Below, in pieces: positions 18,345 to 37,320 of a stretch of DNA of 64,000 nucleotides. Source of the DNA: Octopus sinensis (taxonomy: Eukaryota); NCBI RefSeq assembly GCF_006345805.1, contig NC_043000.1:90334001-90398000 (forward strand), in the 5' to 3' direction. Each line of letters opens with the position of its first letter. The stretch's first letter is position 1. Below the pieces are notes generated by a model, which saw only the letters and a program-made list of their open reading frames with translations, made no database searches and was not told the DNA's origin. Made by a program: the position numbers and the translations under genes.

Positions 18345-18654
18345 TGGCAATTAAATGGATAAACAAATTAGTCACATCAAATATATTAAATTTGCTTTCT
18401 CTCGTTTTGCATGCATACATATATACATATTTTGTATTTGATGTATTTAATATATTTAATTTATTTGATGTGTCTAATTTGTTTATCCGCATAACTGCCT
18501 CTACACCAGTTCAGCTTGAGCTTATAGCCTTTCGTTACCTTGTGGAATGATCCGCTCTAATGACATCGGAATTTAAGTTTGAATCTTAGCATTACTAAGT
18601 GTCTTCTATACGGAGAATCTCTGAATGGATCTCATCTGTGAACTATATACATAT

Positions 18655-18940
18655 ACTCTTTTACTCTTTTAATCTTTTACTTGTTTCAGTCATTTGACTG
18701 TGGCCATGCTGGAGCACCGCCTTTAGTCGAGCAAATCGACCACAGGACTTATTCTTTGTAAGCCTAGTACTTATTCTGTTGGTGTCTTTTGCCGAACCGC
18801 TAAGTTACGGTGACGTAAACACACCAGCATCGGTTGTCAAGCGATGTTGGGGGGGGGTGGACAAACACAGACACACACATACATACATATACACACACAT
18901 ACATACATACATACATACATACATACATACATACATACAT

Positions 18941-18996
<56 letters not shown>

Positions 18997-19015
18997 CACC
19001 ACACACATATATATA

Positions 19016-19054
<39 letters not shown>

Positions 19055-19231
19055 TATACAAATATATACGACGGGCTTCTTTCAGTTTCCGTCTACCAAA
19101 TCCACTCACAAGGCTTTGGTCGGCCCGAGGCTATAGTAGAAAACACTTGCCCAAGGTGCCACGCAGTTGGACTGAACCCGGAACCACGCGGTTCGTAAGC
19201 AAGCTACTAACCACACAGCCACTCCTACGTC
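18655..19231 (-). mobile_element. SINE family A, full length with expanded internal microsatellite
   Basis: Tail ttttacttgtttcagtc to head ccacacagccactcctacgtc. Confidence 0.85.
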
Positions 19232-19568
19232 TAAATAATAATGTAAACGCTTCCACAAATAAAATTGCCCTTCATTTTTGAAGCTCCGGTGAAGCTATAG
19301 GGTGATATACAAGCACTGAAGTATGAGCGCATTTCATCTTTAGTAGGAACAGTTGTAAGCTAACAAAGTTCATGACAATTTTTAGAGATTATTTCCCTTC
19401 CTCATATGGAACTGGTCTCAATTGCTATTTGATAATTGTGACACATCCTCTACAGGTGGAGATAATTTTGATAAATCAAGAACTTATGTTGGTCACTTGG
19501 AGTTATTTCTCTTTGTTTATTTTCAATGAACGTGCGTGCATCTGTGTGTGTGTGTGTTTGATATTTAC

Positions 19569-19689
19569 CGTAGTCCAGTTGGGAACAATTCTGGTATGTA
19601 AAGCCAATTAACAAGAAAAGATCCGCTGATGCCAAACATGCCAATCAATGAAAAGATGGTAGCCGCCATAACAGCATACGAATCTTCAC
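19569..19689 (-). CDS. SLC22-like transporter exon 8 (TM10, ELFPT motif)
   Basis: ttccag|GT GAA...CTA CG|gtaaat; EDSYAVMAATIFSLIGMFGISGSFLVNWLYIPELFPTGL(R). Absent from the ORF track. Confidence 0.92.
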
Positions 19690-19849
19690 CTGGAATGTAT
19701 TAAAATGATATTGATAAGGACAATACTAAGAATAACCAAAGTGGGAAGAAAAATAATGCATTTCAAGACTTATAGCCATTGGTCAAGCAATAAGTCACGA
19801 TACAGCCTCTATGTATTCCATATAAATAATTGGATCTTTTTTGTTTGGC

Positions 19850-21530
19850 TGTACCTGTGAAAATTTCAGTTTAGTGAAAACTTAAAAATTTGGTGTATTG
19901 ATGTAATTTTCCACGCTGAATCTCGGGTGGTATTTCACTTTTTCCAGAAAAAATTTAAAAAATGAGTTATAGAGGTTTAAAATTTAATAGTTTTTTTTAC
20001 CCAGTCAGAAAACAGGATTTGTGCGTGACTGCACGAGTTGTCCTATTGTAGTGATCGGTGTTGGGTGCTTGTATATGTTCTAATGACTTTTTAGTTACTC
20101 TGTGTTATATTTGTTACAAATTCTTGTAGTAAGTTGCACTTAAAGTGTAAATAACTTGTTATTTCAATTCCAGGCCAAGATGGGTAAACAAAGTGATCTT
20201 TGTCTCCATTGAATTAGACAAATAGAAGTGTATTTGAGGGATACATCAATTAAACAGAGAGAAATTGCATTGCAAAGAAGCTAAATGTTTCAACTCAGAC
20301 AATTAGTGCAATTAAGAAAAAAAATGGAAAAGAGCAAAGATTTCATGGTAAAAAGGGTTGGTAACTGTGGTAGGAAACGAGTAACAACCCCTAGGATTAA
20401 TAGAAAAGTAAAAAAAGAATTTCTCTCAATAATAGAAGAGCATCTTATAGTAAGATTTTCCGCAAATTAATGGAACATTAATGTGCATGGAAGAACAATT
20501 AACAACAGACTTTTAGAAGGTGGATTACACGCATATCATCTAAGGAAAAAACAAACATGCATGGGCTAAAAATCACATTGCAAGGACTTCTGAGCAATGG
20601 GAGCAGGTAAGAGTATCTAAAATAGTGGATTAGAGTCTTTATGTATTGTATCCATGATAAAATATAATATTATTGATAAAATAAAGATGTTACCATTGAT
20701 TTCAGTCATCAAACCAGCTTTACAAAGGATTATTTAAAAATGGCTATTAATTTCTGATTGTGATAGACTGAAACAATAACTTATTCTGGATGTCCTATTA
20801 ATCAAATATGGTTTTCAATTGTTGCAGGTGGTGTTTTCGGATGAATCCACTATAGCAATACTCAATGATCGGGTGTAAAGTGCGAGAAGGAGGCTTGGCG
20901 AAGAATTTCGTCCGGATTATCTTCGAAAAAACACTAAAATTTCCACAGAAGTTAATGGTTTGGGGGACAATTTCTGCCCATGGAACTAGTCGCCTGAAAA
21001 TAATTGAAGGTTCTATGAATCAAGAGAACTACATAGAGGTACTTAGAAATTAGAAGTAGAGTAATACCACAAGTACGGGAATGGTATGGGGACAGGTCTT
21101 GGATATTCCAACAGGACTCAGCACCATGCCATACAGCAAAATCGGTAAAGACATGGTTAGCCGAAAATGCTGTTAACGTACTTCCATGGTCAGGAAATTC
21201 ACCTGACATGAATCCAATTGAGAGCCTATAGTGTCTGTTGAAAGATGAAATACAACAATCTCCTATTACTACCAAATGCCTCCTTATTGAGCACCTCATA
21301 CAAGTTTGGTTCCATTGGGACAGAATCAAGGATTTGTGCAGAATGCTAGTTCGTGGCATGCCTCGACGTATACAAGCCCTTAATTCTACTAGAGGAGGGT
21401 AAACTGAAATACTAGTTCTGTGTAAGTAATAGGAAATAAATTATCTGCCGATACATAAATTTAGTTTATTTTACCTCTATTTATAGAAATACCAAAAATG
21501 TCAAAAACCCATAATAATGTTTCCAGTATT

Positions 21531-21531
<1 letters not shown>
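19850..21531 (+). mobile_element. Tc1-like DNA transposon (DD34E), decayed, intron-containing transposase
   Basis: ATG 20180 (MGKQSDL); WEQ|VVFSDES across a GT-AG intron 20607-20827; LMVWG; FQQD-34 aa-E (NSPDMNPIE); multiple stops and frameshifts; right end ccagtattg. The left end is unresolved. Confidence 0.85.
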
Positions 21532-21580
<49 letters not shown>

Positions 21581-21638
21581 TGTGTGTGTGTGTATTTAAG
21601 ATTAGGTTCCTTGGATAAGAATCACAAAGGGGACTTAC

Positions 21639-21724
21639 TTGAACTCATACGAAGTATAACTGCAACAATTAGACTTCCACCGGCGATACTCTGGAAAAGA
21701 ATACACGTTTTCTTCCGTCCAATT
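21639..21724 (-). CDS. SLC22-like transporter exon 7 (TM9)
   Basis: ttcttcag|A ATT GGA CGG AAG...TCA A|gtaagt; (R)IGRKKTCILFQSIAGGSLIVAVILRMSS. Confidence 0.9.
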
Positions 21725-23404
21725 CTGAAGAAAGAAAAGTAAATGCTAGCATATCTCAACTTATGTCTGTTATTGGTTCCAAGATACGCGAATTAACTCG
21801 GAAAACGACGTAACGTGAAATAGTGTATATCTGTTTTAATAAATGGTTTGTGTATATTTTCGCACGTATTTTATTTGATTTTTTTCCACTCCAGTATTGG
21901 TTTTCTGGAGCTTTTTAAAAATCTGTATGCTTTTAAATATTTTCGCCGAGGGCGACATAAAGTCGGAAGTTGAGTTTTATTTTCCCATTACTTTCTTAAA
22001 AGCACCAGAAAAAAGAAAGAGAAGCCAACTTGAAGTCGAAAAAGACGTAACGCGAAACAACGTAATTTGAGGGATGCCCGTGTTCTTATATAACAGAACT
22101 TATTGATTTCTATTGAGAAAAGGCACAAGACCGCAAATTTAGAGAAGGGGAATTTTGTCTTGAATATTTTAAAGTCAGAAGTGCATCGGCTGTGAATCGT
22201 TTAAATTATCTACATGACTGAAAAGATGAAAAGGGGATTTTAGTCTTAAAGCCAGGATACTGGCAGATGCTTGCAGTAGGGTGGATTCTATTAAGGACTC
22301 TCACTCCATGGCCCTGTTGGTGGTGGTTGTTAAACTGAATGTATTAAGTGTATGTTTGTCCCTATAACACAAACCGTATATGAGATTCTATCAAACTATT
22401 GTAGTTGTCGTTATCAATACAACAACAACAACAACGACGACAACAACAACAAAACAGCCTGTGGCGCTTGAGACGTTTGGAGGAGCTGGGCCGCCAGCGA
22501 AATGTTTTTCCCACGAGTATTCCGGACTCCAGTAATGAACTCATTTGCATACAGCCAATCAGAGCTCACCTTGACCTTGCTGTCGCCGCTCAGCTCTCAG
22601 ATGATACCTAGACGCAAAGTCCAACATAACGTTCGTGAATGTGTCAAAAACAACCAATCTCTTGGTAAAACAAACCCTACCAAGTAAACTCAAGACAAAG
22701 AACGGTGTTGTAAGTCGACCGATCACCAAGTTATGCCTGATTTTAGAAAGAAACAAGTAATTAGATAGATTTGCATCTATACCTATTGTCGGATTTTGTT
22801 AGGGCCCCATCTAGTAAAGATGTGGATGGGGAAAATGTGGGTAGAGGGTGATGTGTTAGCAACCCTCTCCCCTTACTGTTTTACAAAGTAAAACAACACA
22901 AATAACTACGCAGAGGCAGCCATGGTTGAAACAAGAACAAAAAACAAGCATTATTAAAAGAGAAAGAGGCATGGTCATTCCTTACCCAAGTGACCTTATC
23001 TTGTCACCCATCACTTGTTATGCGCTCATAAATTAGTTGGGTAGTCGAGCTCCGATTGGCTGTATGCAAATGAGTTCATAACTGGGGGTCCGGAACTCTC
23101 GTGGGAAAAAATTTTCGCGGGCCACCAACGGCGAAGTTCTTGTCATCGTTGGCGGCTTGCCTTACCGAGGTGCTCGGTGATGCCCGTGAGGGTGCTTGGC
23201 TCACCATACCCCGTGGTAATTCCGCAAGCTTCTTGGCTTCCTTCAGTAGGTCCCGTTCAACCTTCAATTGACGCCTGATGTTGAATTGATGCCTTTTTCT
23301 TCTCTTTCTTTTTCTTTCTTTGTTCCTCTTTTTCCATTTTTTCTCCCAGTTTACAATTTGTATTTTTAATGTGTTTTTTGTATTATATATGTATTCTTTT
23401 ATTT

Positions 23405-23808
23405 TTTATTTCTTTTACTTTTATTTGTTTCAAGTCATTTGACTATGGCCATGGTGGAGCACCTCCTTAAAGGGTTTTAGTTGAAAAAATCGACCCCAGG
23501 ACATATTCTTTATAAGCCTAGTACTTATTCTATCGGTCTCTTTTGCCGAACTGCTAAAATACGGGACGTAAACACACCTACATCGGTTGTCAAGCGCTGG
23601 TGGGGGGACAAACACAGACACAAAGACACACTCATACACACAGAGACCGCAGGCTTCTTTCAGTTTCCGCCTACCAAATCCACTCAAAAGGATTTGGTCT
23701 GCCCGAGGTTATAGTAGTAGACACTGCCCAGAGTGCCACGCTGTGGGACTGAACCCAGAACGACGTGGTTGGGAAGCAAGCTTCTTACCACACAGCCACG
23801 CCTGCGCC
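23405..23808 (-). mobile_element. SINE family A, full length
   Basis: Head ccacacagccacgcctgcgcc and canonical tail. Confidence 0.85.
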
Positions 23809-23844
23809 TACATGTTATATTCCAATAAAAAAAATGTGACTTAC

Positions 23845-23979
23845 CTTATTAATAGTTTCAGAGCTAGAACTTGAGAAGGGAATTCAGCCAAGGCGTATAA
23901 GAAGAAATTTAAATATCTGTTTCCTGCTAAAGTTTCCGATGTGAAGTAAAGTCCGTAATAAACCAGGGTGTTAACAAAC
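23845..23979 (-). CDS. SLC22-like transporter exon 6 (TM7-TM8)
   Basis: cttgcag|G TTT...ATA AG|gtaagt; (W)FVNTLVYYGLYFTSETLAGNRYLNFFLYALAEFPSQVLALKLLI(R). Absent from the ORF track. Confidence 0.93.
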
Positions 23980-24029
23980 CTGCAAGACATCACAAGTTAA
24001 TATAGATTCTATGTTTATTATATTATATA

Positions 24030-24585
24030 GGCATACGCGTGGCTATGTGGTAAGAAGCTTGCTTCCCAACCACATGGTTCCGGGTTCAGTCCCACTGCAT
24101 GGTACATTAGGCAGGTGTCTTCTACTATAGTCTCGGGCCGACGAAAGCCTTGTGAGTGGATTTGGCAGACGGAAACTGAAAGAAGCCCGACGTATGTATA
24201 TATATATATATATATATGGTTCCGGGTTCAGTTCCACTGCGTGGCACCTTGGGGGAGTGTTTTCTTCTATAGCCTCGGGCCAACCAAAGCCTTGTGAGTG
24301 GGTTTGGCAGACCGAAACTAAAAGAAGCCCGCCGTATATATATATATTTATGTGTGTGTGTGTCTTTATGTCTGTGTTTGTCCCCCCACCATCGCTTGAC
24401 ATTTGACGTTGGTGTGTTTACGTCCCCCTAGCATAACGGTTCGGCGAAAGAGACCGATAGAGTAATTACTTGGCTTGCAGAGAATAAGTCCAGTGGGCGA
24501 TTTCTTCCAAGTAAAAAAAAAACCCTTTAAGGTGGTGCTCCAGCATGGCCGCAGTCAAATGACTGAAACAAGTAAAAAAAATAAA
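24030..24585 (+). mobile_element. SINE family A with duplicated 5' half
   Basis: The ggttccgggttcagt...aagaagcccg segment occurs twice (about 24075 and 24218), separated by (TA)n. Confidence 0.8.
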
Positions 24586-24617
24586 ATAATTATAGAAGTA
24601 TCCTAGGTCATATTCCT

Positions 24618-24818
24618 TTTTATCTTTTACTTGTTTCAGTCATTTCACTGCGGCCATGCTGGGGCACCGCCTTGAAAAGTCGAACCGATTGACCCCAGTA
24701 CCTTTTTAAAGCCTAATACTTATTCTATCTTTCTCTTTTACCGAACCGCTAACCTATGGGGACGTAAACAAACCAACACTGGTTGTCAAGCAGTGGTTAG
24801 GAGACAAACACGGATACG

Positions 24819-24889
<71 letters not shown>

Positions 24890-25045
24890 GTACATGACGG
24901 GTTTCTTTCGGTTTCCGTCTTCTAAATTCACTCACAAGGCTTTGGTCGCCCCGAGGCTATAGAAGAGGACACTTGCCCAAGGTGCTTCGCAGATGGACTG
25001 AACCCAGAACCATGTGGTTGGGAAGCAAGCTTCTTACCACAGCCT
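24618..25045 (-). mobile_element. SINE family A
   Basis: Canonical tail and head in reverse with internal (CA)n. Confidence 0.8.
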
Positions 25046-25244
25046 TACAGAAAGTTGTTGGAAAAGTCACATGAGTTATGACCGTCTCCATGCAAAGATG
25101 TAACACTATGTAAAATTTCAGTACTTTGGTGAAATGTTGTAGTTTACGGTTTGGAACTCCCCCCCTCTCTCTCACATACACACACACGCATTCATACAAA
25201 CGGTGCATACATATATACATATATACCTACGCACATACATACGT

Positions 25245-25495
25245 ACATACATGTCTATTGAGAAATCTACAGATACTCTATCCAGATTACAAGTTCAGGT
25301 TTATACCTGTAATTATTGGTGCCCTGGGATATGTAACACACTGCTTAAATACTAATCTTGAGAAATTAGGCTTCTCAAAACCAGAAAGGAGAAAGCTAAT
25401 TCGAAGGTCAAATCCATCAATGGAACTGTAAAAATCTGTAAAACTTTCCAGAAGTTTATCATTTAAATATATATGAGCATGTCTAGATATGCAAC
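25245..25495 (+). mobile_element. REL-endonuclease non-LTR retrotransposon 3' fragment embedded in (CATA)n
   Basis: LLRNLQILYPDYKFRFIPVIIGALGYV...GTVKICKTF, with the IPVxIGALG motif typical of R2/R4/NeSL-type C-termini; (CATA)n on both sides. Confidence 0.7.
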
Positions 25496-26045
25496 TATAT
25501 GCATGAGAATACATACATAAAGCAAAACATACAAATCTGCACATATACATACATACATAAAACAAACATACAAATCTATACATATACACACATACATACA
25601 TACATACATACATACATACATACATACATACATACATACATACATACATACATACAAACAAAAATGCCCTGTTGTTGATGTTGAAATTCCAATGAAGGAA
25701 CCTTGGATCTAGGTTAGAAATCGGTTCTTTCTCTATTGGCAAGAAATCTTGAAATAAACTGAATAATGGCATACATACATACATAAAGCAAACATACAAA
25801 TCTATACATATACATACATACATTCCTACATACATACATACATACATACATACATACATACATACATACATACATACATACATACATACACACATGCATA
25901 CGTACATACATACACACATACACACATACATACATACATAGTAGATACATACGTACATGCATACATACATACATACATACATACACACATACATACATAC
26001 ATACATACATACACACACACATACATACATAAGCATGCATATATA
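25496..26045. repeat. Complex (CATA)n microsatellite region with internal duplicated sub-blocks
   Basis: Seen directly. Confidence 0.9.
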
Positions 26046-26061
26046 CTTGCATAAGTACAAA

Positions 26062-26352
26062 TATGGCCGGGCGTTCCATCGGTTACGATGACAAGTGTTC
26101 CAGTTAATCCGATCAATGGCACAACCGACTCGTGAAATTAACGTGTAAATCGCTGAGCAGTCCACAGACACACGTGGCCTTAACTCAGTTCTCGGAGATA
26201 TTCAGCGTGATACAGGATGTGACAAGGCTGACCCTTTTGAATTACAGGTATTACTCATTTTTGCCAGTTCAGTGGTCTGCAGCAACGTGAAATAAAGTGT
26301 CTTGCTCAAGGACACAACACGCCGCCGGGAATCGAACTCCCGACCTTGCCGT
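26062..26352 (-). mobile_element. SINE family C (tail type 2)
   Basis: Same body as 63150-63480; head partly lost. Confidence 0.75.
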
Positions 26353-26585
26353 GAGTCCGATACTTAATGTACATACATCGATGACAGTCAAATTACTGCG
26401 GTATTCAAAGGAGATAACGTCTCTGATGGACGTGCTGTGTTTAGAAACACTATATAGCGGAAGGAGACGAAAAATCTTTCCAGCAGCAGATCTCTCGAAC
26501 GAAAACCTCGAAAACTTGCCTTTCAATGATATATAAGCATTAAGGATGATGCGTAGATGGCTATTTTTATTTAATACTGCTTCAT

Positions 26586-26716
<131 letters not shown>

Positions 26717-26758
26717 AATAAACGGAGTTAAACGCAGGTGTTATTCAAATTCTTTTAC

Positions 26759-26843
26759 TTCCGACACATGTTTCGAAGATATTACTGGTATTATTCCAAA
26801 GAAATAAAATGGTGTAAAACAATGTAATCTTTTTTTCAGGGAA
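26759..26843 (-). ncRNA. Hammerhead-ribozyme-like motif, long stem II, decayed core
   Basis: ttcc-CTGAAAAAAA-gattac...gtaatatcttc-GAAAC-atgt-GTC-ggaa; stem I ttcc/ggaa, GUC triplet, G8 lost in an A run. Confidence 0.5.
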
Positions 26844-27238
26844 ATGAAGAAATGAAACTCGCCAATAAGACATTTTAACAGAAAATGATGGATATGTATA
26901 GTAATTAACTGAACGCTATTAAGTTTGTTTCAAAAAAACGTTATAGGATATAACGTCAAAGGTAGCCTATATATATATATATATATAAGTTAAATTTAAC
27001 TATTAAAAAATTAAGGATATAACGTCAAAGTTAACTTATATATATATAACAGTTAAATTTAAATTTAAAAAATTAAGCTTTAGAAAGGAGGCATTAGAAT
27101 GCGTTGCATCTGATGTCATTACATTGTTCTCCGTCCACTCGGGAGCAGTACGATTGCTGTTCTAATAAAGCTTCTAGTTATAATTCTTCCGTATCAATCA
27201 TTTAATGTGTGTGTGTGTGTGTGTACATACGTACTTAC

Positions 27239-28696
27239 CACAAATATAAACAAATGAAAACAATTCTACGCAAGACAGGTTCTTTGATGATGTACAACAT
27301 GCCGGGAAGTTGGCAACGCGATCTCACTGCCGTCTCTGTGAGCTGTTTGTGAGCACGTGAAGGTTTCTCCCGCTGCTGTTCGGATATAATTGTGTTTATT
27401 GGCATCAATTCAGTGATTGCAGCAATTTCTGACACCCCCGCTTCAATTTCTGGTAGACGGCCATTACATTTCACAAAGTTGTTTTCGTTATAAATATTAC
27501 GATCGACTTGTAACGCTTCTTGAGATACTGACGAATCGTTGTAAGTACCTAGATTGTCGTCTGTTTCATTACTAGCATTTATATGTCGATCATTGTCATG
27601 GATACTATTAGGCAATGTTTTATTAATACTAGGCATACTTTCAGTACGTATTCCCAGGTCTTCGTTCTGAATATGTATATGAGAAGTCATTACTGCACTT
27701 AATGTTCTTTTTAAAACGATATCATTCTTATCCGGTATCTGTTGGAATGTATCTAGGTCGGCGTTTATATATTCTGCTTTTGTTGAATACATTTCATCAA
27801 AGTTTACATTTGTATTTACTATGTCTGTTAGTATGTTATTAGTTTGTTGTAATTCAACCTTTCCAATGTCTTCATTGATGTCATGTATATCTTGCAGACT
27901 AGTGTTCTTGGCGATATTATTCGCTTTTGTTGGGTTTGTCCGTTTGGAAAGAATATTCATGGCGTCAGTATTGAGTTTTTGTGTTTGTTGGGAGACAGTG
28001 TCTTCGGTTTTGATGTCAAAATTTGTGTCTTGTACATGCTGTGAGGAGCGGGAACTATCGTTTACAACGGCGTCTTTGTCTTCTGCCTGTTTGTGACAAT
28101 TGTTTTCGATGTTAACATTTACATACACTGTCTGGTGGCAGGAAGTAGATTCTGTCAGTTGGAAGTCTCTCTGTTGATGTTTGTCTGTATTTACAACCAA
28201 GCCTTCAAGACAAACGTTTGAACTGTCGACATTTCTGATTTCAGAGTCATCGTTTTTCGCTGTATCGATATTTCTGTCTTCTGTTTGTGCAGAATTAATT
28301 TTCGAAGAGTTGGCATTTATCTGTTTTGCCAGCTGACCAGAAGCACTTGTTATGTGAACATTTTTGTCCTGTATTTTTGGAGAAAAGCTGTTCGATGATT
28401 TGTGAGCACTGTCGACATATTCAGTGTCATTCGTGATTTGGGTAGGTATTTCTCCTGTATAGGCACTTAGAGAAGGTTCAATGGAATTCAGTTTTGCAGA
28501 ATCTACAACATCTCCAATTACATGAGACGAGGTGTCTGAGTGGGAGGCTTCTGATCCCAACGGATCAAAATGGCGATAAACATACGCCACTTGGTCATAG
28601 TCAACATCATTCTTTTTTGCAGCTTTCTTAATCAGACGTTTTGCTTCTGTCCATCTGTCTTTGGCAATTAACCAACGTATAGACTCATCTATAGAC
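27239..28696 (-). CDS. SLC22-like transporter exon 5 (ESIRWL, greatly expanded TM6-TM7 cytoplasmic loop, start of TM7)
   Basis: gttttag|G TCT ATA GAT GAG...TTG TG|gtaagt; 1458 nt stop-free, phase 2 to phase 2; begins (W)SIDESIRWLIAKDRWTEAKRLIKKAA and ends IIKEPVLRRIVFICLYL(W). Confidence 0.88.
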
Positions 28697-29769
28697 CTAA
28701 AACAGTGAGAGGCAAGGGATTATTCTGCAAAAGAATCAAACCGAAGAAGTAGTTTCAAGGTGAAATAATATACTAAAGGTCACTTTAAAAAGATGTCGTT
28801 GGAATTAGTAAGAAAGAAATGCGACAAGTGATAAAAAGTATCACCAAGATGAAATAAAAAAAAGCTTAGAAACAGTCACCGCTGCCACCACCATCACCGC
28901 CACCAACAACAACAGGAACAGGAAACAAATAATAATTAGCTATAATAAAGCTTTCTCATTACATATAATATTGTCAACATGCATTGTGGTTTCCATGTAA
29001 AATGTCTATACTGGGTGGGTGGAAATGTCTTGCTTAAAGGCGGTACTCGTATCAGAGGCAGTATATGAATTCAAATCATTGTTAACAACTCGTGCTTAGT
29101 TTTTTGTCACATAAAATATTGCATGTTAACTCCACTCAGTATTATTAATTGATTTCACAGAAGAGGGGAAATGTTTACGAGATCCTCCCTTCAATAGTGA
29201 AACTGCTACTGTAGCAATGACAAAAAAAAAAAACAAAAACAAAAAAAAAACAAAAAACAAAAACAAAAAACAAAATCGTAACTTAAGATGGGCGATTTCC
29301 CTTGATCGGGATTATGGAGCAAATTGGGATAATCACCCTTAAGCTATAATTTGTTGTCAGCAATTTTGGAATAATTGACTTAGTCACTTGAGGGTGCTTC
29401 TAATAATGTAACTATTGTTTTGTTTCCATTACAACAATAGAGCAGTTACCTTTTCGTCTGCGACTAGCATTTTTCATGATACGCCATGTTTGATCGTAAC
29501 AGTTGCACTGTATTTTGCGTGAGTTCACATTCAATACACTAAGTTACTCTGTTCAAAGATGTCTTCTGCAGTTTAACAACACCAGCATTTTGTGTGTAAA
29601 CATCCCGACATAAAATAAGATTATTTATGAAACGAGATAAACGTTTGAAATTCTTTGCTTCAGTACATGAGCCAGTGGTGTTACTTCGACACGCGGAAGG
29701 CCGATAGTGTCATTTTCTTTCGGCTTTACACCGCATCTCGACGTCTATGAACGATTAACTAGTATCATT

Positions 29770-30110
29770 GGATAACATCCAACACTACTATAGATATTCA
29801 ATTTAAACTTCCATAGTCCGATATATGCATAAGAAAAGATATAAGCATAGAAGGAATTCCAGAGGAAAGCAAGTGATTGAGTGAAGTGTTTAGTCTGGGA
29901 TGTGTGATATGTGATGTAAGAATTAGCCAGGGAGATAAGAGCATGAGACACAGGGTCATCGCGTAAGCTCTGGTGGAGGTGATTTGCAGTTTGGTAATTA
30001 AGTTGAAACGATGCTGTTGCAGTAGCCCTATATAAACACAATTCGATTAATCTAGAAGCCTCATCAACCCTGATCAAACAAATCTATGATAAAAGGCATT
30101 CCAACCATAA
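29770..30110 (-). mobile_element. CR1/L2-group (Crack-like) LINE 3' remnant
   Basis: QTKHFTQSLAFLWNSF...IF...FKLNI resembles RTxHYxxSFxxRTxxLWNxLP...FKxNI termini. Confidence 0.4.
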
Positions 30111-31396
30111 TCATCCCGTCTTTTTGTATATTTGGGGCAGCTTATTTTTAGGATGGTAGGGTATGATTAGAAGGTGTTTCGGCTTCCATTTTAAATAGGG
30201 TAAACGATCACGAGGAAATTCCCTTATTGGTTTAGCCATGTCTGATATTGACCTCAGTGTTTCAGAAATGAAACCCATAATTCCTGAAATTTCTGGAGTA
30301 GGGAGGCACTGAAAATGGATAGCAGACTGGGAAAGTTTTGAATTATTGTTGAAGATAGTTTATTTTTTTTTAATGGCTCTGTTTGTCGGTGAAGATCAAC
30401 ATCATAGCTCTTTCCAGGAGGCCCGATACGTGTGCATATGTGTGTGTGTGTGTGTGTGTGTGTGAGTGTGGTGTGTGTGCATGTATGCGTGTATTTGTAT
30501 GTATATATATATGTGTGTGTGTGTGTATTTATGTGTGCGTACGTGTGTGTGTGCGTGTGTGTGTGTGTATGTGTGTGTGTGTGTGTGTGTGTGTACATGA
30601 ATCTTAGATGGGAGATCCACTCTGGATGCTTATAACAGAGCGGACTCCATTAAAAACACCAAAGAACTATGCGGCAGTGTTAAATTGAGAGACGGATTAA
30701 GTATGTCGCTCAATGTTAAGTCTCACTGCTTTTCACTAACGAAATATTAATCAAATTGCATTAATTAAAAACACTACTGTTAATTACATGCTTGATAAAC
30801 AATAATAATACATAATATCAAAATACATGATCCAGTGAAAGTCATTATTATTGTTTTTGTAGAATCCCATGTCAGAATTGATCAGGCAGACGATGACTGA
30901 AGATATTCTGGTCATGGCCACCATGTCTTTTCAGGCTTGTTTAGTCTCGAGCTACGTTACCCAGAATATCCCCGCTCGATACTTTTCTAAAAGGTGGCGG
31001 AATGCGTGATTTGAGAGAGATTTGATTGCTATGTCTAAACAGGTCGAGCGACCATGTACAGGGCAAAATGTAGGACTCATCTTTGATTTGAGTAGAGAAT
31101 GTTAAGCGTTCTGGTCCACGCCGATGACGAGCGATATACAGTAATAACATGTAAACTATTTAATAACGAACGCCAATCATGAGCACCGCGGCTCCATTAA
31201 GTCTGGACTACCATCAGACAACGTGCTATATCAATAAAGATTATATAACAAAACAACAGCAACAGCTACAAAACAAAATGCGAAGGTAGCGTGAGCAAAA
31301 TTAATTTACAAACATTTTGGGGAATCTTTATGTAATAATTAACGAAAATACACGAATAAATAAAAGACAATATTTTTTTTTCTGGAGAGAACTTAC

Positions 31397-31599
31397 CATA
31401 TCTCAAATAAAGAAGGACAGAAAAATAAAGCGAAAACAGCATGTAATATTCGCCAATTGAAATTTCGGAAAATATATGCTATTGGCGCCATCATCATCAC
31501 GCCAGAAACCCACATCACTCCACCAAGTAGTAGAACATGGGTTCGATTTTCAGTAGGGAAAAGCTCGGCTATCATTATAGTTCCTGGCACATTCATACC
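31397..31599 (-). CDS. SLC22-like transporter exon 4 (TM4-TM6, ELFPT motif)
   Basis: ctcctag|GGT ATG...ATA TG|gtaagt; GMNVPGTIMIAELFPTENRT...NFNWRILHAVFALFFCPSLFEI(W). Confidence 0.93.
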
Positions 31600-32443
31600 C
31601 TAGGAGAAAAGTGTAAAGGAAAAAAAAGATAAGTGATTTACCATATTTGCCGGCGTATAAAATGCACTCACACGTAAGATGTACCCCCATTTTACAAGTA
31701 TATTTCGTAGGAAAAAATAAAGTATGTTTTATCATACACTCATTGAAAAATATTTTAAAACGTTTTTTTAGGGGATACTGTATGATTCGTGCTTGTATAT
31801 ATAATGCTATGAACAGTGTATTGGAATAAAGTCTGGAACCATAAATTTATTATATATAAACTGTTATACGGATAGCGTATTCCAGATTAACCTTCTTTGT
31901 GATAAACTGTGTAGTAGTTTATATTTTAGCCAAGAGAAATTCCAGGCAGGACATAAAGCTCTCATTTTTAGCTATGATGTTGTAGCAGCATTTGCTGAAC
32001 ACCAACACTGGCAGAGCTTTCTGCCTGTCTATCTCCAGAGGCAATGCGCCCGCACTATTCGGAGCTTAAGATGGTAGCTGAGAGCAGCACACTTCACCTT
32101 TCCTGTAAATAAACCAGTTGTAAATAGCAGATGTACTTGAAGTTTTCTCTTCGCCTGCCGAAAGCCTGAACTACATAAAGAACAAGAAGAATGATGGAAA
32201 GGGATGATATTCCTCTGATATCATAAACCTTGCCTTCCGTTATTAAAATATCTTGTTATCGCAATCGTTCACCAGGGTGGTGCACCACCGCTATGATTTT
32301 GTCATCCACTCATTGTAAATAGTTGATAAGCGAATGAAACTTTAACGGTCCTTTTATCTTTCTGGGAGAATTTGCATTTAGTTAATTGGAAGAAAAAATG
32401 CTTCTTAAATGTTGGACAGTCATTAAATAACTTCTAATACATA

Positions 32444-32608
32444 GGCGTAGGAGTGGCTGTGTGGTAAGTAGCTTGCTTACCAACCACATGGCTCCGGGTT
32501 CAGTCCCACTGCGTGGCACCTTGGGCAAGTGTCTTCTACTATAGCCTCGGGCCGACCAAAGCCTTGTGAGTGGATTTGGTAGACGGAAACAGAAAGAAGC
32601 CCGTCGTA

Positions 32609-32700
<92 letters not shown>

Positions 32701-32940
32701 TGTGTGTGTGTGTGTTGTGAATATGTTTGTGTGTCTGTGTTTGTCCTCCCAACATCGCTTGACAACCGATGCTGGTGTGTTTACGTCCCCGTAACTTAGC
32801 GGTTCGGCAAAAACGACCGATAGAATAAGTACTAAGCTTACAAAGAATAAGTCCTGGGGTCGATTTGCTCGACTAAAGGCAGTGCTCCAGTATGGCCACA
32901 GCCAAATAACTGAAACAAGTAAAAAGAGTAAAAAGAGTAT
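32444..32940 (+). mobile_element. SINE family A, full length
   Basis: Head ggcgtaggagtggctgtgtggtaag to tail agtaaaaagagtaaaaagag. Confidence 0.87.
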
Positions 32941-33092
32941 ATGAAGTGTGAGCAATGTATACTGGGGAAGAAGTATAATGAAAAAAAATTACTTTCCAAC
33001 GTAACTGCCGGCGTACAATTAGCAATTTTTCGTTAGGTTGTGCTCCCAGACTACAATATTTTGGATTGTTTTCAATATCTTATAATTAGTTA

Positions 33093-33306
33093 AGGTGGCG
33101 AGCAGGTAGAATCGTTAGCTCGCCGGGCAAAATGCTAAGCGGCATTTCGTTCGTCTTTATGTTCTAAGTTCAAATTCCACCGAGGTCGACTTTACCTTTC
33201 ATCTTTTCCGGATCGATGAAATAAGAACCATTTGTGTTTTAGGGTCGATGTAAGCGACTTAGCCCCATCCCCCGAAGTTACTGGCCTTGTACCAAAATTT
33301 GAGACC
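33093..33306 (+). mobile_element. tRNA-derived SINE family B, full length
   Basis: Head ggtggcgagcaggtagaatcgttagc (A-box-like) and gttcaaattcc (B-box-like). Confidence 0.8.
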
Positions 33307-34314
33307 AAAATTTTATAATTATTAACAATTATTGTGCCTAGAGGACTTTATGCTTATCTACTTCCGTAGCCTATGACACTCGGCTTACGTCTGCAATACA
33401 GCCATAGTAGACGCTGGGCACTTTTTGCGTCTTATACGTCGGCAAACACATCATGTTAAACTATTTTGTATATGTTATACCAATCATAATTTATGTTATA
33501 TATAAATTAGGCCAACCAGAATCTCATTTTTAGTCTGAAATCAGTATTGGTTGAACATTATTAAAGTCTTTCTAGTTATAACCATAATGTCTTTTATGCA
33601 GTTTATCAAAGACTTTATCATCTAACGTTTCTAGACAAGAGTAGTGAAGACAGAACTACCATTTCTAGCAAACAGAGTGATCATAGAGACGTTTCCTCAT
33701 TGTTTCATGTTGCAGGGAAATATTTTTATTCCTAAATTACTAATAGAAAATAGCTGTTGTTTAACACCAGGTCAGCCTGATCGAGCATACTTTTGATTAA
33801 ATACATTCACGCCATGATATTACTGTCTTTTTTTTTCAAGCATAGAGTACACTGGACTATATTATCGAATGCATTCTTTTAAGAAGGTCATGGTGCGTCA
33901 TGGATTTGGGTGCTATTTCTACCAGCTCGAAAAACCACGTGGAGGGTCTCGCGCTGTCTCTGTTTATCATAAATAGGTCGCTATTATTATCTGGTGTACT
34001 ATAAATAGATCACAACTATTAGCTGGTGAGCCATTTGTAGGTCAGTCTTCTAATCGGGGCACCAGAACTAGGACAATATTGTAAACAGTGTACAATAAGT
34101 AGGTTAGTACTTTCAAACAGCCAACTATAACTGCCTTTAGTCTTTTTGTTTCCTTTGTGGTATATTCCCAAGAAGAGCAACATCTTTTGTCCGAGTATCT
34201 ACCACTCTATCTTCCAATATCTGAAAAATGATGGAAACATATGTAAAGAATTACACCCTTTACTATCTCCACTATTTTTCTCTCTTCATTATTTGGTCAT
34301 CAGAACGAAACAGC

Positions 34315-34441
34315 GATTTCTTTCTTACATCACACCCCAGTGATTTATCTCTTACGTCACGCACATGCGATCTTTCACCTCTGTCACATACAAACAATTT
34401 CTCTCCCACGTCACGCACCAACGATTTCTCTCCTACGTCAT
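34315..34441. repeat. 27-bp degenerate minisatellite, about 4.7 units
   Basis: cgatttctttcttacatcacaccccag / tgatttatctcttacgtcacgcacatg / cgatctttcacctctgtcacatacaaa / caatttctctcccacgtcacgcaccaa / cgatttctctcctacgtca. Confidence 0.8.
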
Positions 34442-35006
34442 TTATCAGTGGTTACACTCCAGTGTTACACACCAGTTACCTTTCTTCCTTGAGAACTTTG
34501 TCGGAAACAATTTTGCTGCCTTTGACGTCACCAGCAGACCTTTCAACTCGGTTTAACATGAAAATCTTTTAGTTAAGTTGCCTGTCTAAAGCGCTTATCC
34601 ATTTAATCATCTCTAGAATCGAAAATATCCTACCAATGCACACCATCTCAGTGTGCGCGGGTACGGTCTCTTTCATTCTTTCTCGCTCCTTCTCTCCCCC
34701 CTCTCTCTCCCCTCCTATCAACTTTAGTGTACTTCAGGGTTCGGTTACATCTCACATATTTTTCTGCTGTATATCAAAGACCTATTACCTGTCACTACCA
34801 ACAAAATGCATACATTCTCTTCCACAAATCATGCAACTTTTCCATTTCTCATCAAACTTCTGTAGAAAGGCTCCATCTACATGCAACCTACGCAAGCTTG
34901 CACAGTTTCCATGAAGGGAGTCTTTGAAAACATCCACATATAAAGACACGTCAATACCAAAACAGTTAATGCCAAAAAGTAATCGCTACATATACCGATA
35001 TGAATA

Positions 35007-35161
35007 TGGCTGTGTGGTAAGTAGCTTGCTAACCAACCACATGGTTCCGGGTTCAGTCCCACTGCGTAGCATCTTGGGCAAGTGTCTTCTGCTATAGCCC
35101 CGGGCCGACCAATACCTTGTGAGTGGATTTGGTAGACGGAAACTGAAAGAAGCCTGTCGTA

Positions 35162-35259
<98 letters not shown>

Positions 35260-35473
35260 TTGTGTGTCTGTGTTTGTCCCCCTAGCATTGCTTGACAACC
35301 GATGCTGGTGTGTTTACGTCCCCGTCACTTAGCGGTTCGGCAAAAGAGACCGATAGAATAAGTACTGGGCTTACAAAAAAGAATAAGTCCCGAGGTCGAT
35401 TTGCTCGACTAAAGGTGGTGCTCCAGCATGGCCGCAGTCAAATGACTGAAACAAGTAAAAGAGTAAAAGAGTA
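35007..35473 (+). mobile_element. SINE family A
   Basis: Canonical body with (TA)n(TG)n and tail. Confidence 0.85.
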
Positions 35474-35763
35474 ATATCAAGAGAAAAAAATTCTATTACA
35501 TTCCTCCCTATGTAAAAAAAAAAAAAAAAAAAAAAGAACTAAAACTTTACGATCGTTGCGATTGTCCAGAATCTCTGATGACTCACAGCAGTTTATCATA
35601 TAAAACATCGGCAAAGCTGTATTAAAAGGCTAAGTTTCCTCTTTAAAGCTCGACAACAATTTAGCTCCGATCAGCGGACGAAATGCTGCTGAGCATTTGG
35701 TTCGGCGTGTAAACGTTTCTGCCAGCTGGATGCCTTTAGTAATTATGGAAAAAAAAAAAGATG

Positions 35764-36145
35764 CTTGCTTCCCAACCACATGGTTCCGGGTTCACTCCTA
35801 CTACGTGGCATCTTGGGCAAGTATCTTCTAGTATAGCCTCGGACCGACCAGTCTTGTGAGTGGATTTGGTAGACGGAAACTGAAAGAAGCCAGTCGTATA
35901 TATATATATGTATATATCTTTGGATGTGTATTTTTATGTCTGTGTTTGTCCCCTCATCACCGCTTGACAGCTGGTATTGGTGTGTTTACGACCCTGTAAC
36001 TTAGCGGTTCATCAAGAGACTGAAAGAATAAGTACTATGCTTTTAAAAAGTCCTGGGATCAATTTGTTTGACTAAGACCCTTGAAAGCAGCGCTCCAGCA
36101 TGGCCGCAATCAAATGATTGAAACAAATAAGTGTAAAAAAGAAAA
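35764..36145 (+). mobile_element. SINE family A, older copy
   Basis: cttgcttcccaaccacatggttccggg...cagcatggccgcaatcaaatga. Confidence 0.8.
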
Positions 36146-36293
36146 AAAAAAAGAAAGAAAAGGAATAATTCAAAATGAAACGCTTTTGGGGAATTGTATA
36201 TGAAGGAGTGAAGGAAGAGGTTATGTCCCGTCACTTGATTTTTTTCCACACACCATGCTTGTGCGTTTGTGCTAAATAAATAATAATTCTTAC

Positions 36294-36524
36294 CGGTTGA
36301 AGTAAGCCACAGAGGAAACGGCAGACAAGTAGAAAGGAGTAGTTGGGTGAGACCAATACCATCAAATTGACGAACAGAGATCCAATCCGAGCTCCGACGT
36401 AAACTGGTTTTCTTCCATACTTATCCGCTAAAGATGGGAACAGAGCGGCCCCTATCATCATGCCAACATGAAACACAGTAGTGACTAGTTTACCGAATTC
36501 TTCTTGGTCGCATACCAGATCCCA
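36294..36524 (-). CDS. SLC22-like transporter exon 3 (WDLVC, TM2-TM4, MFS motif A)
   Basis: ttatcag|TGG GAT CTG GTA TGC...CAA CCG|gtaaga; WDLVCDQEEF...LADKYGRKP...RFLCGLLQP. Confidence 0.95.
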
Positions 36525-36594
36525 CTGATAAAACAGAAATTAGTACATATAATAAATGTAAAAAATAGTTATGTGTTGTGTATGTGCATGCATG

Positions 36595-36667
<73 letters not shown>

Positions 36668-36684
36668 GTCTATCTGTCTGTCTA

Positions 36685-36723
<39 letters not shown>

Positions 36724-36745
36724 GTCTGTCTGTCTGTCTGTCTAC
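36595..36745. repeat. (TCTA)n(TCTG)n microsatellite
   Basis: Seen directly. Confidence 0.95.
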
Positions 36746-37061
36746 CTCTTCAGTTGTATACTTTAATACAGTACACTTCACCAGATATTTCAGACTCAGT
36801 GTTTAGATCAACATTTTTATCTTATATCTGTGTTGCGTTGTAATCATATTATCAAAGAAGAGATCTAGATTATAATAAATTATAAACACGGGCCACATAG
36901 TATTTGAATATTAACGAAAACCATTTATTGATATTTCGAATGCATTTAACGTACTTCGCTTGTAATGACTGAAGGGGTAATTCATATGAGTAACAACTTG
37001 TTACATAACCACTTGAAACTTGCGTAGTAAATGCATTCGAAATATCAGTAATTGGTTTTTG

Positions 37062-37063
<2 letters not shown>

Positions 37064-37143
<80 letters not shown>
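37064..37143. repeat. (CA)n microsatellite
   Basis: Seen directly. Confidence 0.95.
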
Positions 37144-37144
<1 letters not shown>

Positions 37145-37277
37145 CTTTATTGATCACACTAACAAATGTCCTTATACATTGCTGGTCGCAATGTGTTCCT
37201 ATCCTTTTCATAGCGCCCTTCTTTTCCATTTCGACTCGAATTGTTTAACTGACAAAATACACACATATATAAATTTC

Positions 37278-37320
37278 TACCTACCTACCTACCTACCTAC
37301 CTACCTACCTACCTACCTAC

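What the first reader, a model, noticed from the sequence alone, without database searches (positions are those of the whole stretch)
27239..28696. SLC22 transporter with an extra ~400-aa acidic, N/S/T/D-rich cytoplasmic domain in one 1458-nt exon
Seen: a stop-free 1458-nt exon with canonical splice sites and matching phases. Its first ~35 codons (ESIRWL...A.K.AAK.N) and last ~20 codons (IIKEPVLRR...LYLW) are ordinary SLC22 sequence, with about 430 low-complexity residues between them. Known: SLC22 proteins are about 550 aa, and this TM6-TM7 loop, normally well under 100 aa, is the main kinase-regulated cytoplasmic region. Inference: the 968-aa product has a large disordered regulatory or scaffold module, possibly lineage-specific. 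An ORF this long in such AT-rich DNA is unlikely by chance. I cannot exclude that long loops are common among mollusc paralogs.
Basis: partly seen in the sequence, partly recalled or inferred. Interest (0 to 1): 0.7.

Follow-up and report, generated by a model that had tools for sequence, protein, structure and literature searches.

The report
Octopus SLC22 transporter with giant disordered loop
An octopus membrane transporter of the SLC22 family has its central cytoplasmic loop stretched about eight-fold by a 415-residue acidic, unstructured insert found only in this cephalopod gene lineage. The insert is real and kept in frame, but its sequence evolves almost freely, so it looks like a tolerated flexible spacer rather than a proven regulatory domain.

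Summary
On the minus strand, 28696..27239 is a 1458-nt stop-free exon with canonical AG/GT sites. It is exon 5 of a complete 10-exon, 968-aa SLC22-family gene (53331..8237). The window is probably Octopus sinensis, because the RefSeq protein LOC115210859 is 100% identical.

Residues 312-726 (window 28560..27316) form a 415-aa insert with pI 4.8, 39% N+S+T+D and no Pfam domain. It has no homolog among 1.84 billion representative proteins. AlphaFold2 gives it pLDDT below 50 and no secondary structure, while the transporter core scores about 90.

The TM6-TM7 loop is 462 aa here, 604 aa in Argonauta and 234 aa in a spliced transcript of another cephalopod. It is 47-117 aa in 53 other SLC22 homologs, including octopus paralogs, so long loops are not routine.

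The frame is kept in at least five species. Against another octopod, however, substitutions match neutrality in pattern (omega about 0.95, 0.66-1.37) and in rate (equal to the intron rate). Only over the saturated Octopus-Argonauta distance does weak constraint appear (33% identity, conserved islands, conserved acidity).

It grew inside the exon, and Argonauta still carries an in-frame 45-nt tandem array. It is not a retained intron or a transposon.

Verdict: a real, lineage-specific disordered linker expansion. The proposed regulatory or scaffold role is unproven.

The parts
27239..28696 (-). Exon 5 (1458 nt). It encodes the whole TM6-TM7 cytoplasmic linker, residues 266-752 of the 968-aa protein.
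   Evidence: Stop-free frame, acceptor ttttag|G and donor TG|gtaagt, phases matching the neighbouring exons. The same single exon with the same phases occurs in another octopod (L002), in Argonauta (L011 8512-10395) and in an unidentified cephalopod (L006).
27316..28560 (-). The 415-aa orphan insert (residues 312-726): acidic, N/S/T/D-rich and predicted disordered.
   Evidence: Composition. No Pfam hit. phmmer against 1.84e9 representative proteins finds only itself. AF2 pLDDT is below 50 with no secondary structure. Highest 19-residue Kyte-Doolittle window mean is 1.22, below the 1.5 cut-off used for membrane segments.
28561..28696 (-). Conserved 5' part of exon 5: ESIRWL motif and the helices after TM6 (residues 266-311, SIDESIRWLIAKDRWTEAKRLIKKAAKKNDVDYDQVAYVYRHFDP).
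   Evidence: 94% nucleotide identity to L002. Aligns to OCT2 residues about 283-311. AF2 helices at isoform X2 residues 172-209, which is +100 in the 968-aa numbering.
27239..27315 (-). Conserved 3' part of exon 5: CQLPGMLYIIKEPVLRRIVFICLYLW, the short cytoplasmic helix and the start of TM7.
   Evidence: 99% nucleotide identity to L002. Identical or nearly identical in Argonauta, P0004 and P0003.
53175..53331 (-). Exon 1: ATG at 53331, N-terminus and TM1.
   Evidence: tblastn with transcript-derived P0004; gene model.
38204..38409 (-). Exon 2: extracellular TM1-TM2 loop (Cys60, Cys86, Cys104; sequons NKT65 and NYS109).
36294..36524 (-). Exon 3: WDLVCD motif, TM2-TM3, MFS motif LADKYGRKP.
31397..31599 (-). 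Exon 4: TM4-TM6.
23845..23979 (-). Exon 6: TM7-TM8.
21639..21724 (-). Exon 7: IGRKK motif and TM9.
19569..19689 (-). Exon 8: TM10.
12221..12293 (-). Exon 9: TM11, including Arg878, which aligns with the substrate-site Asp of OCT2.
8237..8473 (-). Exon 10: TM12, C-terminal tail and the TAA stop at 8239-8237.

Best explanation
Exon 5 encodes the central cytoplasmic linker of an intact, strongly conserved SLC22-type (OCT/OCTN/OAT-like) major-facilitator transporter. The gene belongs to a cephalopod-specific orthogroup.

In this lineage the unstructured stretch of the linker has been expanded within the exon, at least partly by in-frame tandem duplication. That stretch lies between the helices after TM6 and the short helix before TM7. 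The result is a 415-aa acidic, polar, intrinsically disordered tether with no relatives elsewhere.

The insert is translated, because the C-terminal six-helix bundle lies downstream in the same frame. Selection removes stops and frameshifts and keeps the insert polar and acidic. Its residue sequence is only weakly constrained, and its length drifts from 187 to 557 aa among lineages.

Mechanistically it most likely acts as a long flexible connector. It leaves the rocker-switch core unaffected, because its two anchor points sit next to each other on the cytoplasmic face. Any function it has would come from bulk properties (length, negative charge, 80 Ser/Thr) or a few short motifs in its C-terminal third, not from a folded domain.

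Shown here: anatomy, translation frame, disorder prediction, lineage restriction and evolutionary rates. Inferred: cytoplasmic location (from family topology), tolerance by the core, and the function.
For: - Gene model: complete 968-aa model with canonical splice sites. Without the insert the protein is 553 aa with pI 8.7, a normal SLC22 size.
- Family: SLC22 by Pfam, PDB sequence search and fold search.
- Core conservation: 90.4% Octopus-Argonauta and 74.9% to P0004. Omega is about 0.06-0.11 for the exon-5 flanks.
- Orphan status: no domain and no homolog in 1.84e9 representative proteins.
- Disorder: AF2 pLDDT is below 50 with no secondary structure across X2 residues 216-614, while the core scores about 90.
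- Frame retention: open in O. sinensis, O. vulgaris, O. bimaculoides, a further octopod and Argonauta. All three indels against L002 are multiples of 3. Only 0.7% of neutral simulations stay open.
- Transcript evidence: RefSeq isoform X2 keeps the whole insert. A spliced 2689-nt transcript contig (L001, P0004) keeps its own 187-aa counterpart, colinear with a genomic single exon in a related species.
- Near-neutral short-term evolution.
- Weak long-term constraint: blastp E = 6e-23 and 33% identity although 4-fold sites are near saturation, 0.338 against 0.261 by chance.
- Bulk properties: pI 4.4-5.8, S+T 16-21% and hydrophobic residues 22-27% in all six inserts. F, Y, W, C, L and M are depleted relative to translated introns.
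- Growth by slippage: a 45-nt in-frame tandem array in Argonauta.
Against: - There is no direct octopus RNA or peptide evidence here. The RefSeq models are predictions whose read support I could not inspect.
- The alignment behind the AF2 prediction of the insert holds only 3-4 sequences, so low pLDDT is partly expected.
- Persistence and growth of a long insert in every lineage sampled, despite the usual bias towards deletion, could mean that length itself is selected. That would be a function beyond 'tolerated spacer'.
- The short-term omega interval (0.66-1.37) still allows moderate constraint. The long-term estimate (0.45-0.6 or lower) is inflated by alignment optimisation.
- The species behind P0003 and P0004 are unidentified, so 'coleoid-wide' is an inference from the core-identity tree.
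Confidence: 0.6

Rival explanations
1. One reading: the insert is a selected regulatory or scaffold module. Examples would be a phospho-regulated, partner-binding or autoinhibitory loop that controls activity, trafficking or clustering of the transporter. Function would be encoded in short linear motifs and in charge and length.
For: - The insert is retained and long in every member of the orthogroup sampled, at 187-557 aa.
- Net acidity, S/T content and low hydrophobicity are conserved across lineages whose sequences no longer align.
- Conserved islands are shared with Argonauta at saturated synonymous distance: QTVYVNVNIEN, LKRTLS..., LQVDRNIxNxN, KCNG, RSRCQLPGM.
- The C-terminal 187 codons trend towards constraint (P = 0.088).
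- The TM6-TM7 loop is the known kinase-regulated region of vertebrate OCTs (established knowledge, not tested here).
Against: - The substitution rate equals the intron rate, and the synonymous/nonsynonymous split equals the neutral expectation between two octopods.
- Substitutions are spread evenly over codon positions: 53, 44 and 58.
- Length varies three-fold, and there is no detectable similarity between the octopod inserts and the P0004 insert.
- The best candidate basophilic kinase site (KRTLS) is RTLR in the L002 species.
- There is no domain or motif hit.
Confidence: 0.25
2. The middle of exon 5 is an exitron, an intron inside a coding exon. It would be spliced out of most mature mRNAs, so the usual protein has a normal-length loop and the long form is minor or unproductive.
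For: The insert's nucleotide divergence equals that of the flanking intron. Its substitutions look neutral. No octopus transcript could be inspected here.
Against: - A neutral intron would not stay open: only 0.7% of simulations do. It would not have only in-frame indels.
- It would not remain open in five species, including Argonauta at a synonymous distance I estimate at about 1.6 from 4-fold sites.
- The only GTRAG donor-like site (exon offset 1369) lies downstream of all three acceptor-like sites, so no internal intron can be drawn.
- The coding strand is A-rich and T-poor, unlike the introns, and its translated composition differs sharply from translated introns.
- The spliced transcript contig L001 keeps its whole counterpart.
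- The RefSeq model keeps the insert.
Confidence: 0.08
3. The insert is a captured foreign or non-coding sequence, either a retained ancestral intron or an exonised transposable element, rather than an in-exon expansion.
For: One bivalve homolog (Mya arenaria P0009) has an intron inside the variable part of this loop. The introns of this gene are full of SINE-like and retroelement remnants.
Against: - The loop is one exon in Haliotis, Pinctada, the O. sinensis paralog, the Argonauta paralog and all orthologs. The Mya intron is therefore not ancestral.
- The insert matches nothing else in the window at the nucleotide or protein level.
- It matches nothing among 1.84e9 representative proteins.
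- A 561-1245-nt intron that was open at birth has a probability of about 1e-5 or less, using the stop rate.
- Argonauta shows ongoing in-frame tandem duplication.
Confidence: 0.04

Closest known systems
Vertebrate SLC22 transporters with solved structures: OCT1/2/3, OCTN2, OAT1, URAT1 (for example PDB 8et9, 9pdq, 8sdu, 9b1l)
   Same: Same family by sequence (E about 1e-47) and by fold (Foldseek probability 1.0, TM-score 0.6-0.75 normalised to the target). Shared features are 12 TM helices in a 6+6 arrangement, an extracellular TM1-TM2 loop with cysteines and sequons, SEWDLVC before TM2, LADKYGRK after TM2, ES(I/P)RWL after TM6, and cytoplasmic helices in the TM6-TM7 linker.
   Different: The TM6-TM7 linker is 462 aa instead of about 50-57 aa. 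The extracellular loop is shorter, at about 70 aa. Arg878 stands where OCT2 has the cation-site Asp, as in OATs and OCTNs (my knowledge), so the substrate is probably not a simple cation. No substrate has been tested.
Mollusc 'organic cation transporter protein-like' genes: O. sinensis paralog P0010, Argonauta paralog P0077, Mya P0009, Haliotis P0012, Patella P0011, Pinctada P0076, Elysia P0013
   Same: These are the nearest non-orthologous relatives, at 36-39% core identity for P0010 and P0009. Exon layout is the same around the loop, which is a single exon in all checked except Mya.
   Different: Their loops are 72-99 aa by the alignment measure, and about 125 aa in P0077 by my count from its sequence. 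None carries sequence similar to the insert.
Orthologs in other cephalopods: O. bimaculoides XP_014781136 (P0006), Argonauta hians Ahia01_000962300 (P0007), unidentified cephalopod transcript P0004 and genomic exon P0003
   Same: Same orthogroup, with 75-90% core identity. The insert sits at the same place, in one exon with the same splice phases. All the inserts are acidic and polar.
   Different: Insert lengths are 415, 557, 187 and 185 aa. Octopus-Argonauta identity in the insert is only 33%. The P0004 insert shows no significant similarity to either octopod insert.
[quoted passage not shown]
   Same: Both are cytoplasmic loops without defined structure and with high sequence divergence. 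That paper's title proposes autoregulation of signalling through this loop (title and abstract only).
   Different: The protein fold and family are different. No evidence here shows that the octopus loop gates the transporter.

Membership tests
SLC22 (organic cation/anion/zwitterion transporters, major facilitator superfamily) | MFS fold with two six-helix bundles (12 TM helices) | tested here: met
   Pfam Sugar_tr (1e-31) and MFS_1 (1e-29) cover both halves. The AF2 model of isoform X2 shows TM2-TM12 at pLDDT about 90, and TM1 is encoded by exon 1 (hydropathy peak at residues 29-51). Foldseek's top 29 hits are all SLC22 structures.
SLC22 | Closest sequence relatives are SLC22 members rather than other MFS families | tested here: met
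   In the PDB search OCT2 scores 6.7e-47, OCTN2 1.1e-46 and OAT1 1.2e-42. SV2 scores about 1e-5 and the bacterial glucose transporter GlcP 2e-15. Database homologs are named organic cation transporter or SLC22.
SLC22 | Large extracellular loop between TM1 and TM2 with conserved cysteines and N-glycosylation sequons | tested here: met
   Residues about 53-125 carry Cys60, Cys86 and Cys104, plus Cys126 in WDLVC, and sequons NKT65 and NYS109. At about 70 aa the loop is shorter than in mammalian members.
SLC22 | Signature motifs: (S/T)xxxEWDLVC before TM2, MFS motif A (LxDxxGRK) between TM2 and TM3, ESPRWL after TM6 | tested here: met
   SEWDLVCD at 120-127, LADKYGRKP at 153-161 and ESIRWL at 270-275. 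These columns are nearly invariant in the 57-sequence alignment.
SLC22 | Cytoplasmic TM6-TM7 loop of about 50-100 aa | tested here: not met
   The loop is 462 aa, against 47-117 aa in the 53 homologs outside the orthogroup. This is the departure that defines the finding. It is a length difference within a loop and does not affect the fold criteria.
SLC22 | Transport of organic ions, and substrate class | not testable with these tools
   The only clue is Arg878 at the position of the OCT2 substrate-site Asp.
Exitron (intron within a protein-coding exon) | Internal GT...AG pair usable by the spliceosome, and transcripts lacking the internal segment | tested here: inconclusive
   No donor/acceptor pair in the right order was found by the consensus scan. 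The L001 transcript retains its counterpart. Octopus transcripts could not be examined.

The most novel reading that the evidence does not exclude
The giant acidic disordered loop is a selected, coleoid-specific innovation. In this reading its length and negative charge, not its sequence, are under selection. It would act as a tethered autoregulatory lid or an entropic/electrostatic hub on the cytoplasmic face of a highly conserved cephalopod SLC22 transporter, for example by phosphorylation-dependent gating, clustering or sorting. This would be analogous to length-dependent autoregulation by GPCR ICL3.
Probability: 0.2. Interest if true: 0.55.

Novelty: new variant of a known kind. Interest (0 to 1): 0.35.

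Why it matters
SLC22 transporters are among the best-studied drug and metabolite carriers. Their TM6-TM7 linker is short (47-117 aa) in every homolog outside this orthogroup measured here. A naturally occurring version with an eight-fold longer disordered linker, attached to a core that is 75-90% conserved across cephalopods, has three uses.

1. It shows how much insertion the MFS inter-domain linker tolerates.
2. It is a clean example of a large orphan disordered region growing inside an exon by in-frame slippage. The frame is held only by the need to translate the downstream half of the protein.
3. It corrects the public annotation. The O. vulgaris GenBank model is truncated and mis-spliced. 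RefSeq isoform X2 is an exon-2-skipping form that lacks TM1.

The finding does not reveal a new mechanism or a new class of protein.

Tried and rejected
1. 'Long loops are routine': rejected. 53 homologs outside the orthogroup have loops of 47-117 aa. Proteins of 958-1192 aa from fishes, a centipede and a moth are tandem fusions with two ES(P/M)RWL motifs.

2. Nei-Gojobori omega = 0.63 (bootstrap 0.46-0.93) first looked like purifying selection. A simulation with the observed transition share (0.65 in the insert, 0.66 in the intron) and stops forbidden gives omega about 0.95 and P = 0.38. I therefore do not use the 0.63 value as evidence. The same test detects constraint in the 70 flank codons (P = 0.003), so it has power.

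3. Retained ancestral intron: rejected.

4. Transposon or repeat origin: there is no self-similarity, no other copy in the window and no protein homolog.

5. Exitron: no usable internal splice-site pair.

6. Conserved KRTLS kinase site: not conserved in the L002 species.

8. Literature searches for the gene identifiers, the run accessions and SLC22 in octopus found nothing relevant.

9. The species of runs SRR27666080, SRR11869384 (and its three sister runs) and ERR12370320 (and two further ERR runs) could not be identified. No named decapodiform ortholog was returned.
Full report
**1. Observation**

The feature lies on the minus strand. Reading 28695 downwards, the frame is open from upstream of the acceptor (ttttag|G, exon start 28696) to the donor (TG|gtaagt, exon end 27239). 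A TAA follows immediately in the intron. The exon is 1458 nt, made of 1 base, 485 codons and 2 bases.

I used a transcript-derived relative (P0004) as a tblastn probe and read each junction. This gave ten coding exons, all with AG/GT boundaries and consistent phases:
- 53331-53175
- 38409-38204
- 36524-36294
- 31599-31397
- 28696-27239
- 23979-23845
- 21724-21639
- 19689-19569
- 12293-12221
- 8473-8237

With a stop probability of 0.064 per codon, 486 open codons has a chance probability of about 1e-14. The next longest open stretch in the window is 304 codons, which I take to be the microsatellite-derived ORF at 25287-26171.

**2. What the gene is**

Pfam Sugar_tr and MFS_1 hit both halves of the protein and nothing hits the middle. 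The best solved relatives are OCT2 (6.7e-47), OCTN2 and OAT1. The alignment leaves the query at residue 296 and resumes at 711, while OCT2 moves only from 311 to 315.

An AlphaFold2 model of the O. sinensis RefSeq protein, built on a 57-sequence alignment, gives the membrane core pLDDT of about 90. Foldseek's best matches are OCTN2, OCT1, URAT1, OCT2 and OAT1.

The family motifs are present:
- SEWDLVCD at 120-127
- LADKYGRKP at 153-161
- ESIRWL at 270-275
- IGRKK at 798-802
- an extracellular TM1-TM2 loop with cysteines and two sequons

Arg878 aligns with the substrate-site Asp of OCT2. By my knowledge of the family this resembles OATs and OCTNs, so the substrate is probably anionic or zwitterionic. 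That is an inference.

The window is almost certainly Octopus sinensis. RefSeq LOC115210859 isoform X2 (P0005) is 100% identical over its aligned part. The O. vulgaris GenBank protein P0001 differs at two residues within the loop region encoded by exon 5.

**3. The insert**

Residues 312-726 (window 28560-27316) are the extra sequence.
- It is 415 aa with pI 4.84 and net charge -26. N is 11.1%, S 10.8%, D 8.7% and T 8.4%. GRAVY is -0.79 and there is no tryptophan.
- The remaining 553 aa have pI 8.7, which is a normal SLC22 size.
- No 19-residue window in the insert reaches membrane-segment hydropathy.
- AF2 gives pLDDT below 50 and no secondary structure across the whole insert. The alignment is only 3-4 sequences deep there, which is a caveat.
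- It has no internal repeats, no other copy in the window and no Pfam domain.
- An exhaustive phmmer search of 1.84 billion representative proteins returned only its own cluster.

It is an orphan, intrinsically disordered sequence.

**4. Is a long loop routine?**

No. I measured the distance from the L of ES(I/P)RWL to the position just before TM7 on one alignment.

| Protein | Loop length (aa) |
|---|---|
| O. sinensis and O. bimaculoides | 462 |
| Argonauta hians | 604 |
| P0004 | 234 |
| Next longest (P0008, unidentified source) | 117 |
| Other molluscs (Elysia, Haliotis, Patella, Mya, an O. sinensis paralog) | 72-99 |
| All remaining arthropod, vertebrate, tunicate, nematode and cnidarian homologs | 47-80 |

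An Argonauta paralog, P0077, has a loop of about 125 aa by my count from its sequence. The very long fish, centipede and moth hits are tandem two-transporter fusions. The sampling is limited by the word-index search, so more paralogs may exist.

**5. Distribution and age**

The insert sits at the same place, in a single exon with the same splice phases, in several species:
- an unnamed octopod (genomic contigs L002-L005; 77% amino-acid identity over the loop region)
- O. bimaculoides (91%)
- Argonauta (exon L011 8512-10395; 557-aa insert)
- two unidentified cephalopods: genomic exon L006 (P0003, 185 aa) and transcript L001 (P0004, 187 aa)

Core identity is 90.4% for Octopus-Argonauta and 74.9% and 74.7% for each against P0004. 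P0004 is therefore an outgroup to the two octopods, consistent with a decapodiform, although this was not shown.

L001 is a 2689-nt contig with one 771-codon ORF spanning all ten exons. It is therefore a spliced mRNA, and it keeps its whole insert, colinear with the genomic exon of L006.

**6. Origin**

The loop is one exon in Haliotis, Pinctada, the O. sinensis paralog and the Argonauta paralog. Only the Mya gene has an intron there. The insert is therefore not a retained ancestral intron.

Argonauta carries an in-frame 45-nt tandem array of 4.3 or more copies (L011 8743-8995), which encodes the DPQHxTGGKTRxGIG repeats. Growth by in-frame slippage and duplication inside the exon is the supported mechanism.

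**7. Selection**

Against L002, nucleotide identity is 87.5% in the insert, 87.2% in the upstream intron, and 94% and 99% in the conserved exon ends. All three indels are multiples of three. Only 0.7% of simulated neutral sequences with 154 substitutions remain open. The frame is therefore under selection, but this is required simply to translate TM7-TM12 downstream.

Nei-Gojobori omega is 0.63 for the insert and 0.06 for the flanks. Substitutions are strongly transition-biased, 101:54 in the insert and 25:13 in the intron. A simulation with that bias and with stops forbidden expects 111.7 nonsynonymous changes out of 155. The observed count is 110 (P = 0.38; omega about 0.95, 0.66-1.37). Changes are spread 53/44/58 over the three codon positions. 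The 70 flank codons fail the same test (P = 0.003). Over the short term the insert's residues are close to unconstrained.

Over the long term some constraint is visible. Octopus and Argonauta are near saturation at 4-fold sites (identity 0.338 against 0.261 by chance, which I estimate as a synonymous distance of about 1.6). Even so, the inserts still align at 33% identity over 310 codons, with blastp E = 6e-23 over the C-terminal 300 aa or so. Several islands are conserved: QTVYVNVNIEN, LKRTLSxV, LQVDRNIxNxN, KCNG and RSRCQLPGM.

All six inserts are acidic (pI 4.4-5.8), with 16-21% Ser+Thr and 22-27% hydrophobic residues. Compared with translated introns of the same gene, the octopus insert has 2-3.4 times more N, D, E and Q, and 0-0.5 times the F, Y, W, C, L and M.

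My reading is weak selection on bulk character and a few motifs, not on the sequence as a whole.

**8. Alternatives**

- Exitron: the only GTRAG donor-like site lies downstream of all acceptor-like sites. An intron would not stay open across species. I could not inspect octopus reads, so this remains possible at about 8%.
- Transposon or intron capture: rejected on the evidence in sections 3 and 6.
- Pseudogene or artefact: the core is under strong constraint and complete, so this is rejected.

**9. Mechanism (inferred)**

In SLC22 structures the two six-helix bundles are joined on the cytoplasmic side by short helices and an unresolved stretch. The insert sits exactly in that stretch, between HFDP at 311 and CQLPGM at 727. 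Its ends can therefore stay adjacent and the rocker-switch core is not disturbed.

I consider it a long, flexible, acidic tether that is tolerated and maintained in frame. Any regulatory role (80 Ser/Thr, conserved islands, charge) is possible but undemonstrated.

**10. Novelty**

The sequence is in RefSeq as an 'uncharacterized protein'. No paper found in the library mentions the gene or this feature. It is a new variant of a well-known family, interesting mainly as a natural experiment in linker tolerance and in how orphan disordered regions arise. It is not a new kind of system.

Noticed in passing
window 53175-53237 (-) and exon 2, 38204-38409 (-): RefSeq isoform X2 (P0005, 868 aa) begins MSRYCLGFYLLRLIFFQTSLQ. 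This is exon 1 read in another frame from an internal ATG and joined directly to exon 3. It is therefore an exon-2-skipping form that lacks TM1 and the extracellular loop, and is probably non-functional or a prediction artefact.
   Followed up: partly
whole gene, window 8237-53331 (-): The O. vulgaris GenBank model P0001 (748 aa) is a mis-model. Its first 66 or so residues match nothing in this window. It joins ...FPSLADK directly to SIDESIRWL, omitting the rest of exon 3 and all of exon 4 (TM3-TM6), and it ends after exon 7.
   Followed up: partly
window 17095-17589 (-), within 16000-18000: An ORF with a reverse-transcriptase-like motif (...GTRMGPNYANLFVGY...GRYIDDCIG...) lies inside intron 8. 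The surrounding 2 kb has GC 0.47 and GC skew +0.38, against about 0.37 and about 0 elsewhere. It looks like a retroelement remnant.
   Followed up: no
window 12212-12667 (-), 18844-19281 (+), 47787-48194 (-); weaker related ORFs at 32539-32955 (-) and 54916-55338 (+): An interspersed repeat translates as RRASFSFRLPNPL(T/K)RLWSARGYS(R/G)(K/R)HLPKVP(R/C)SGTEPGT. It recurs in both orientations in the introns and upstream region, usually next to (CA)n or (CATA)n microsatellites. It looks like a SINE-type element.
   Followed up: no
window 4849-5313 (+): An ORF has two C2H2 zinc fingers ([13 protein letters not shown]...[16 protein letters not shown]...) followed by a run of 20 threonines. It is probably an exon of a neighbouring zinc-finger gene on the opposite strand, beyond the transporter's stop codon.
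   Followed up: no
L011 (Argonauta hians) 501-18009, compared with window 8237-53331: The Argonauta ortholog spans 17.5 kb and the octopus gene 45 kb, with the same exon layout. The octopus introns are inflated by microsatellites and interspersed repeats.
   Followed up: no
L010 (Mya arenaria) 4529-5286: Among the loci examined, only the Mya homolog has an intron inside the variable part of the TM6-TM7 loop (KEHG|GMNKK). It is absent from Pinctada, Haliotis and the cephalopod genes, so it is probably a lineage-specific gain.
   Followed up: partly
L009 (O. sinensis paralog P0010) 27583-27831 and 28962-29210: The exon encoding residues 107-189 of the paralog matches two places 1.4 kb apart, each at 97.6% identity. 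This is either a local exon duplication or an assembly duplication.
   Followed up: no
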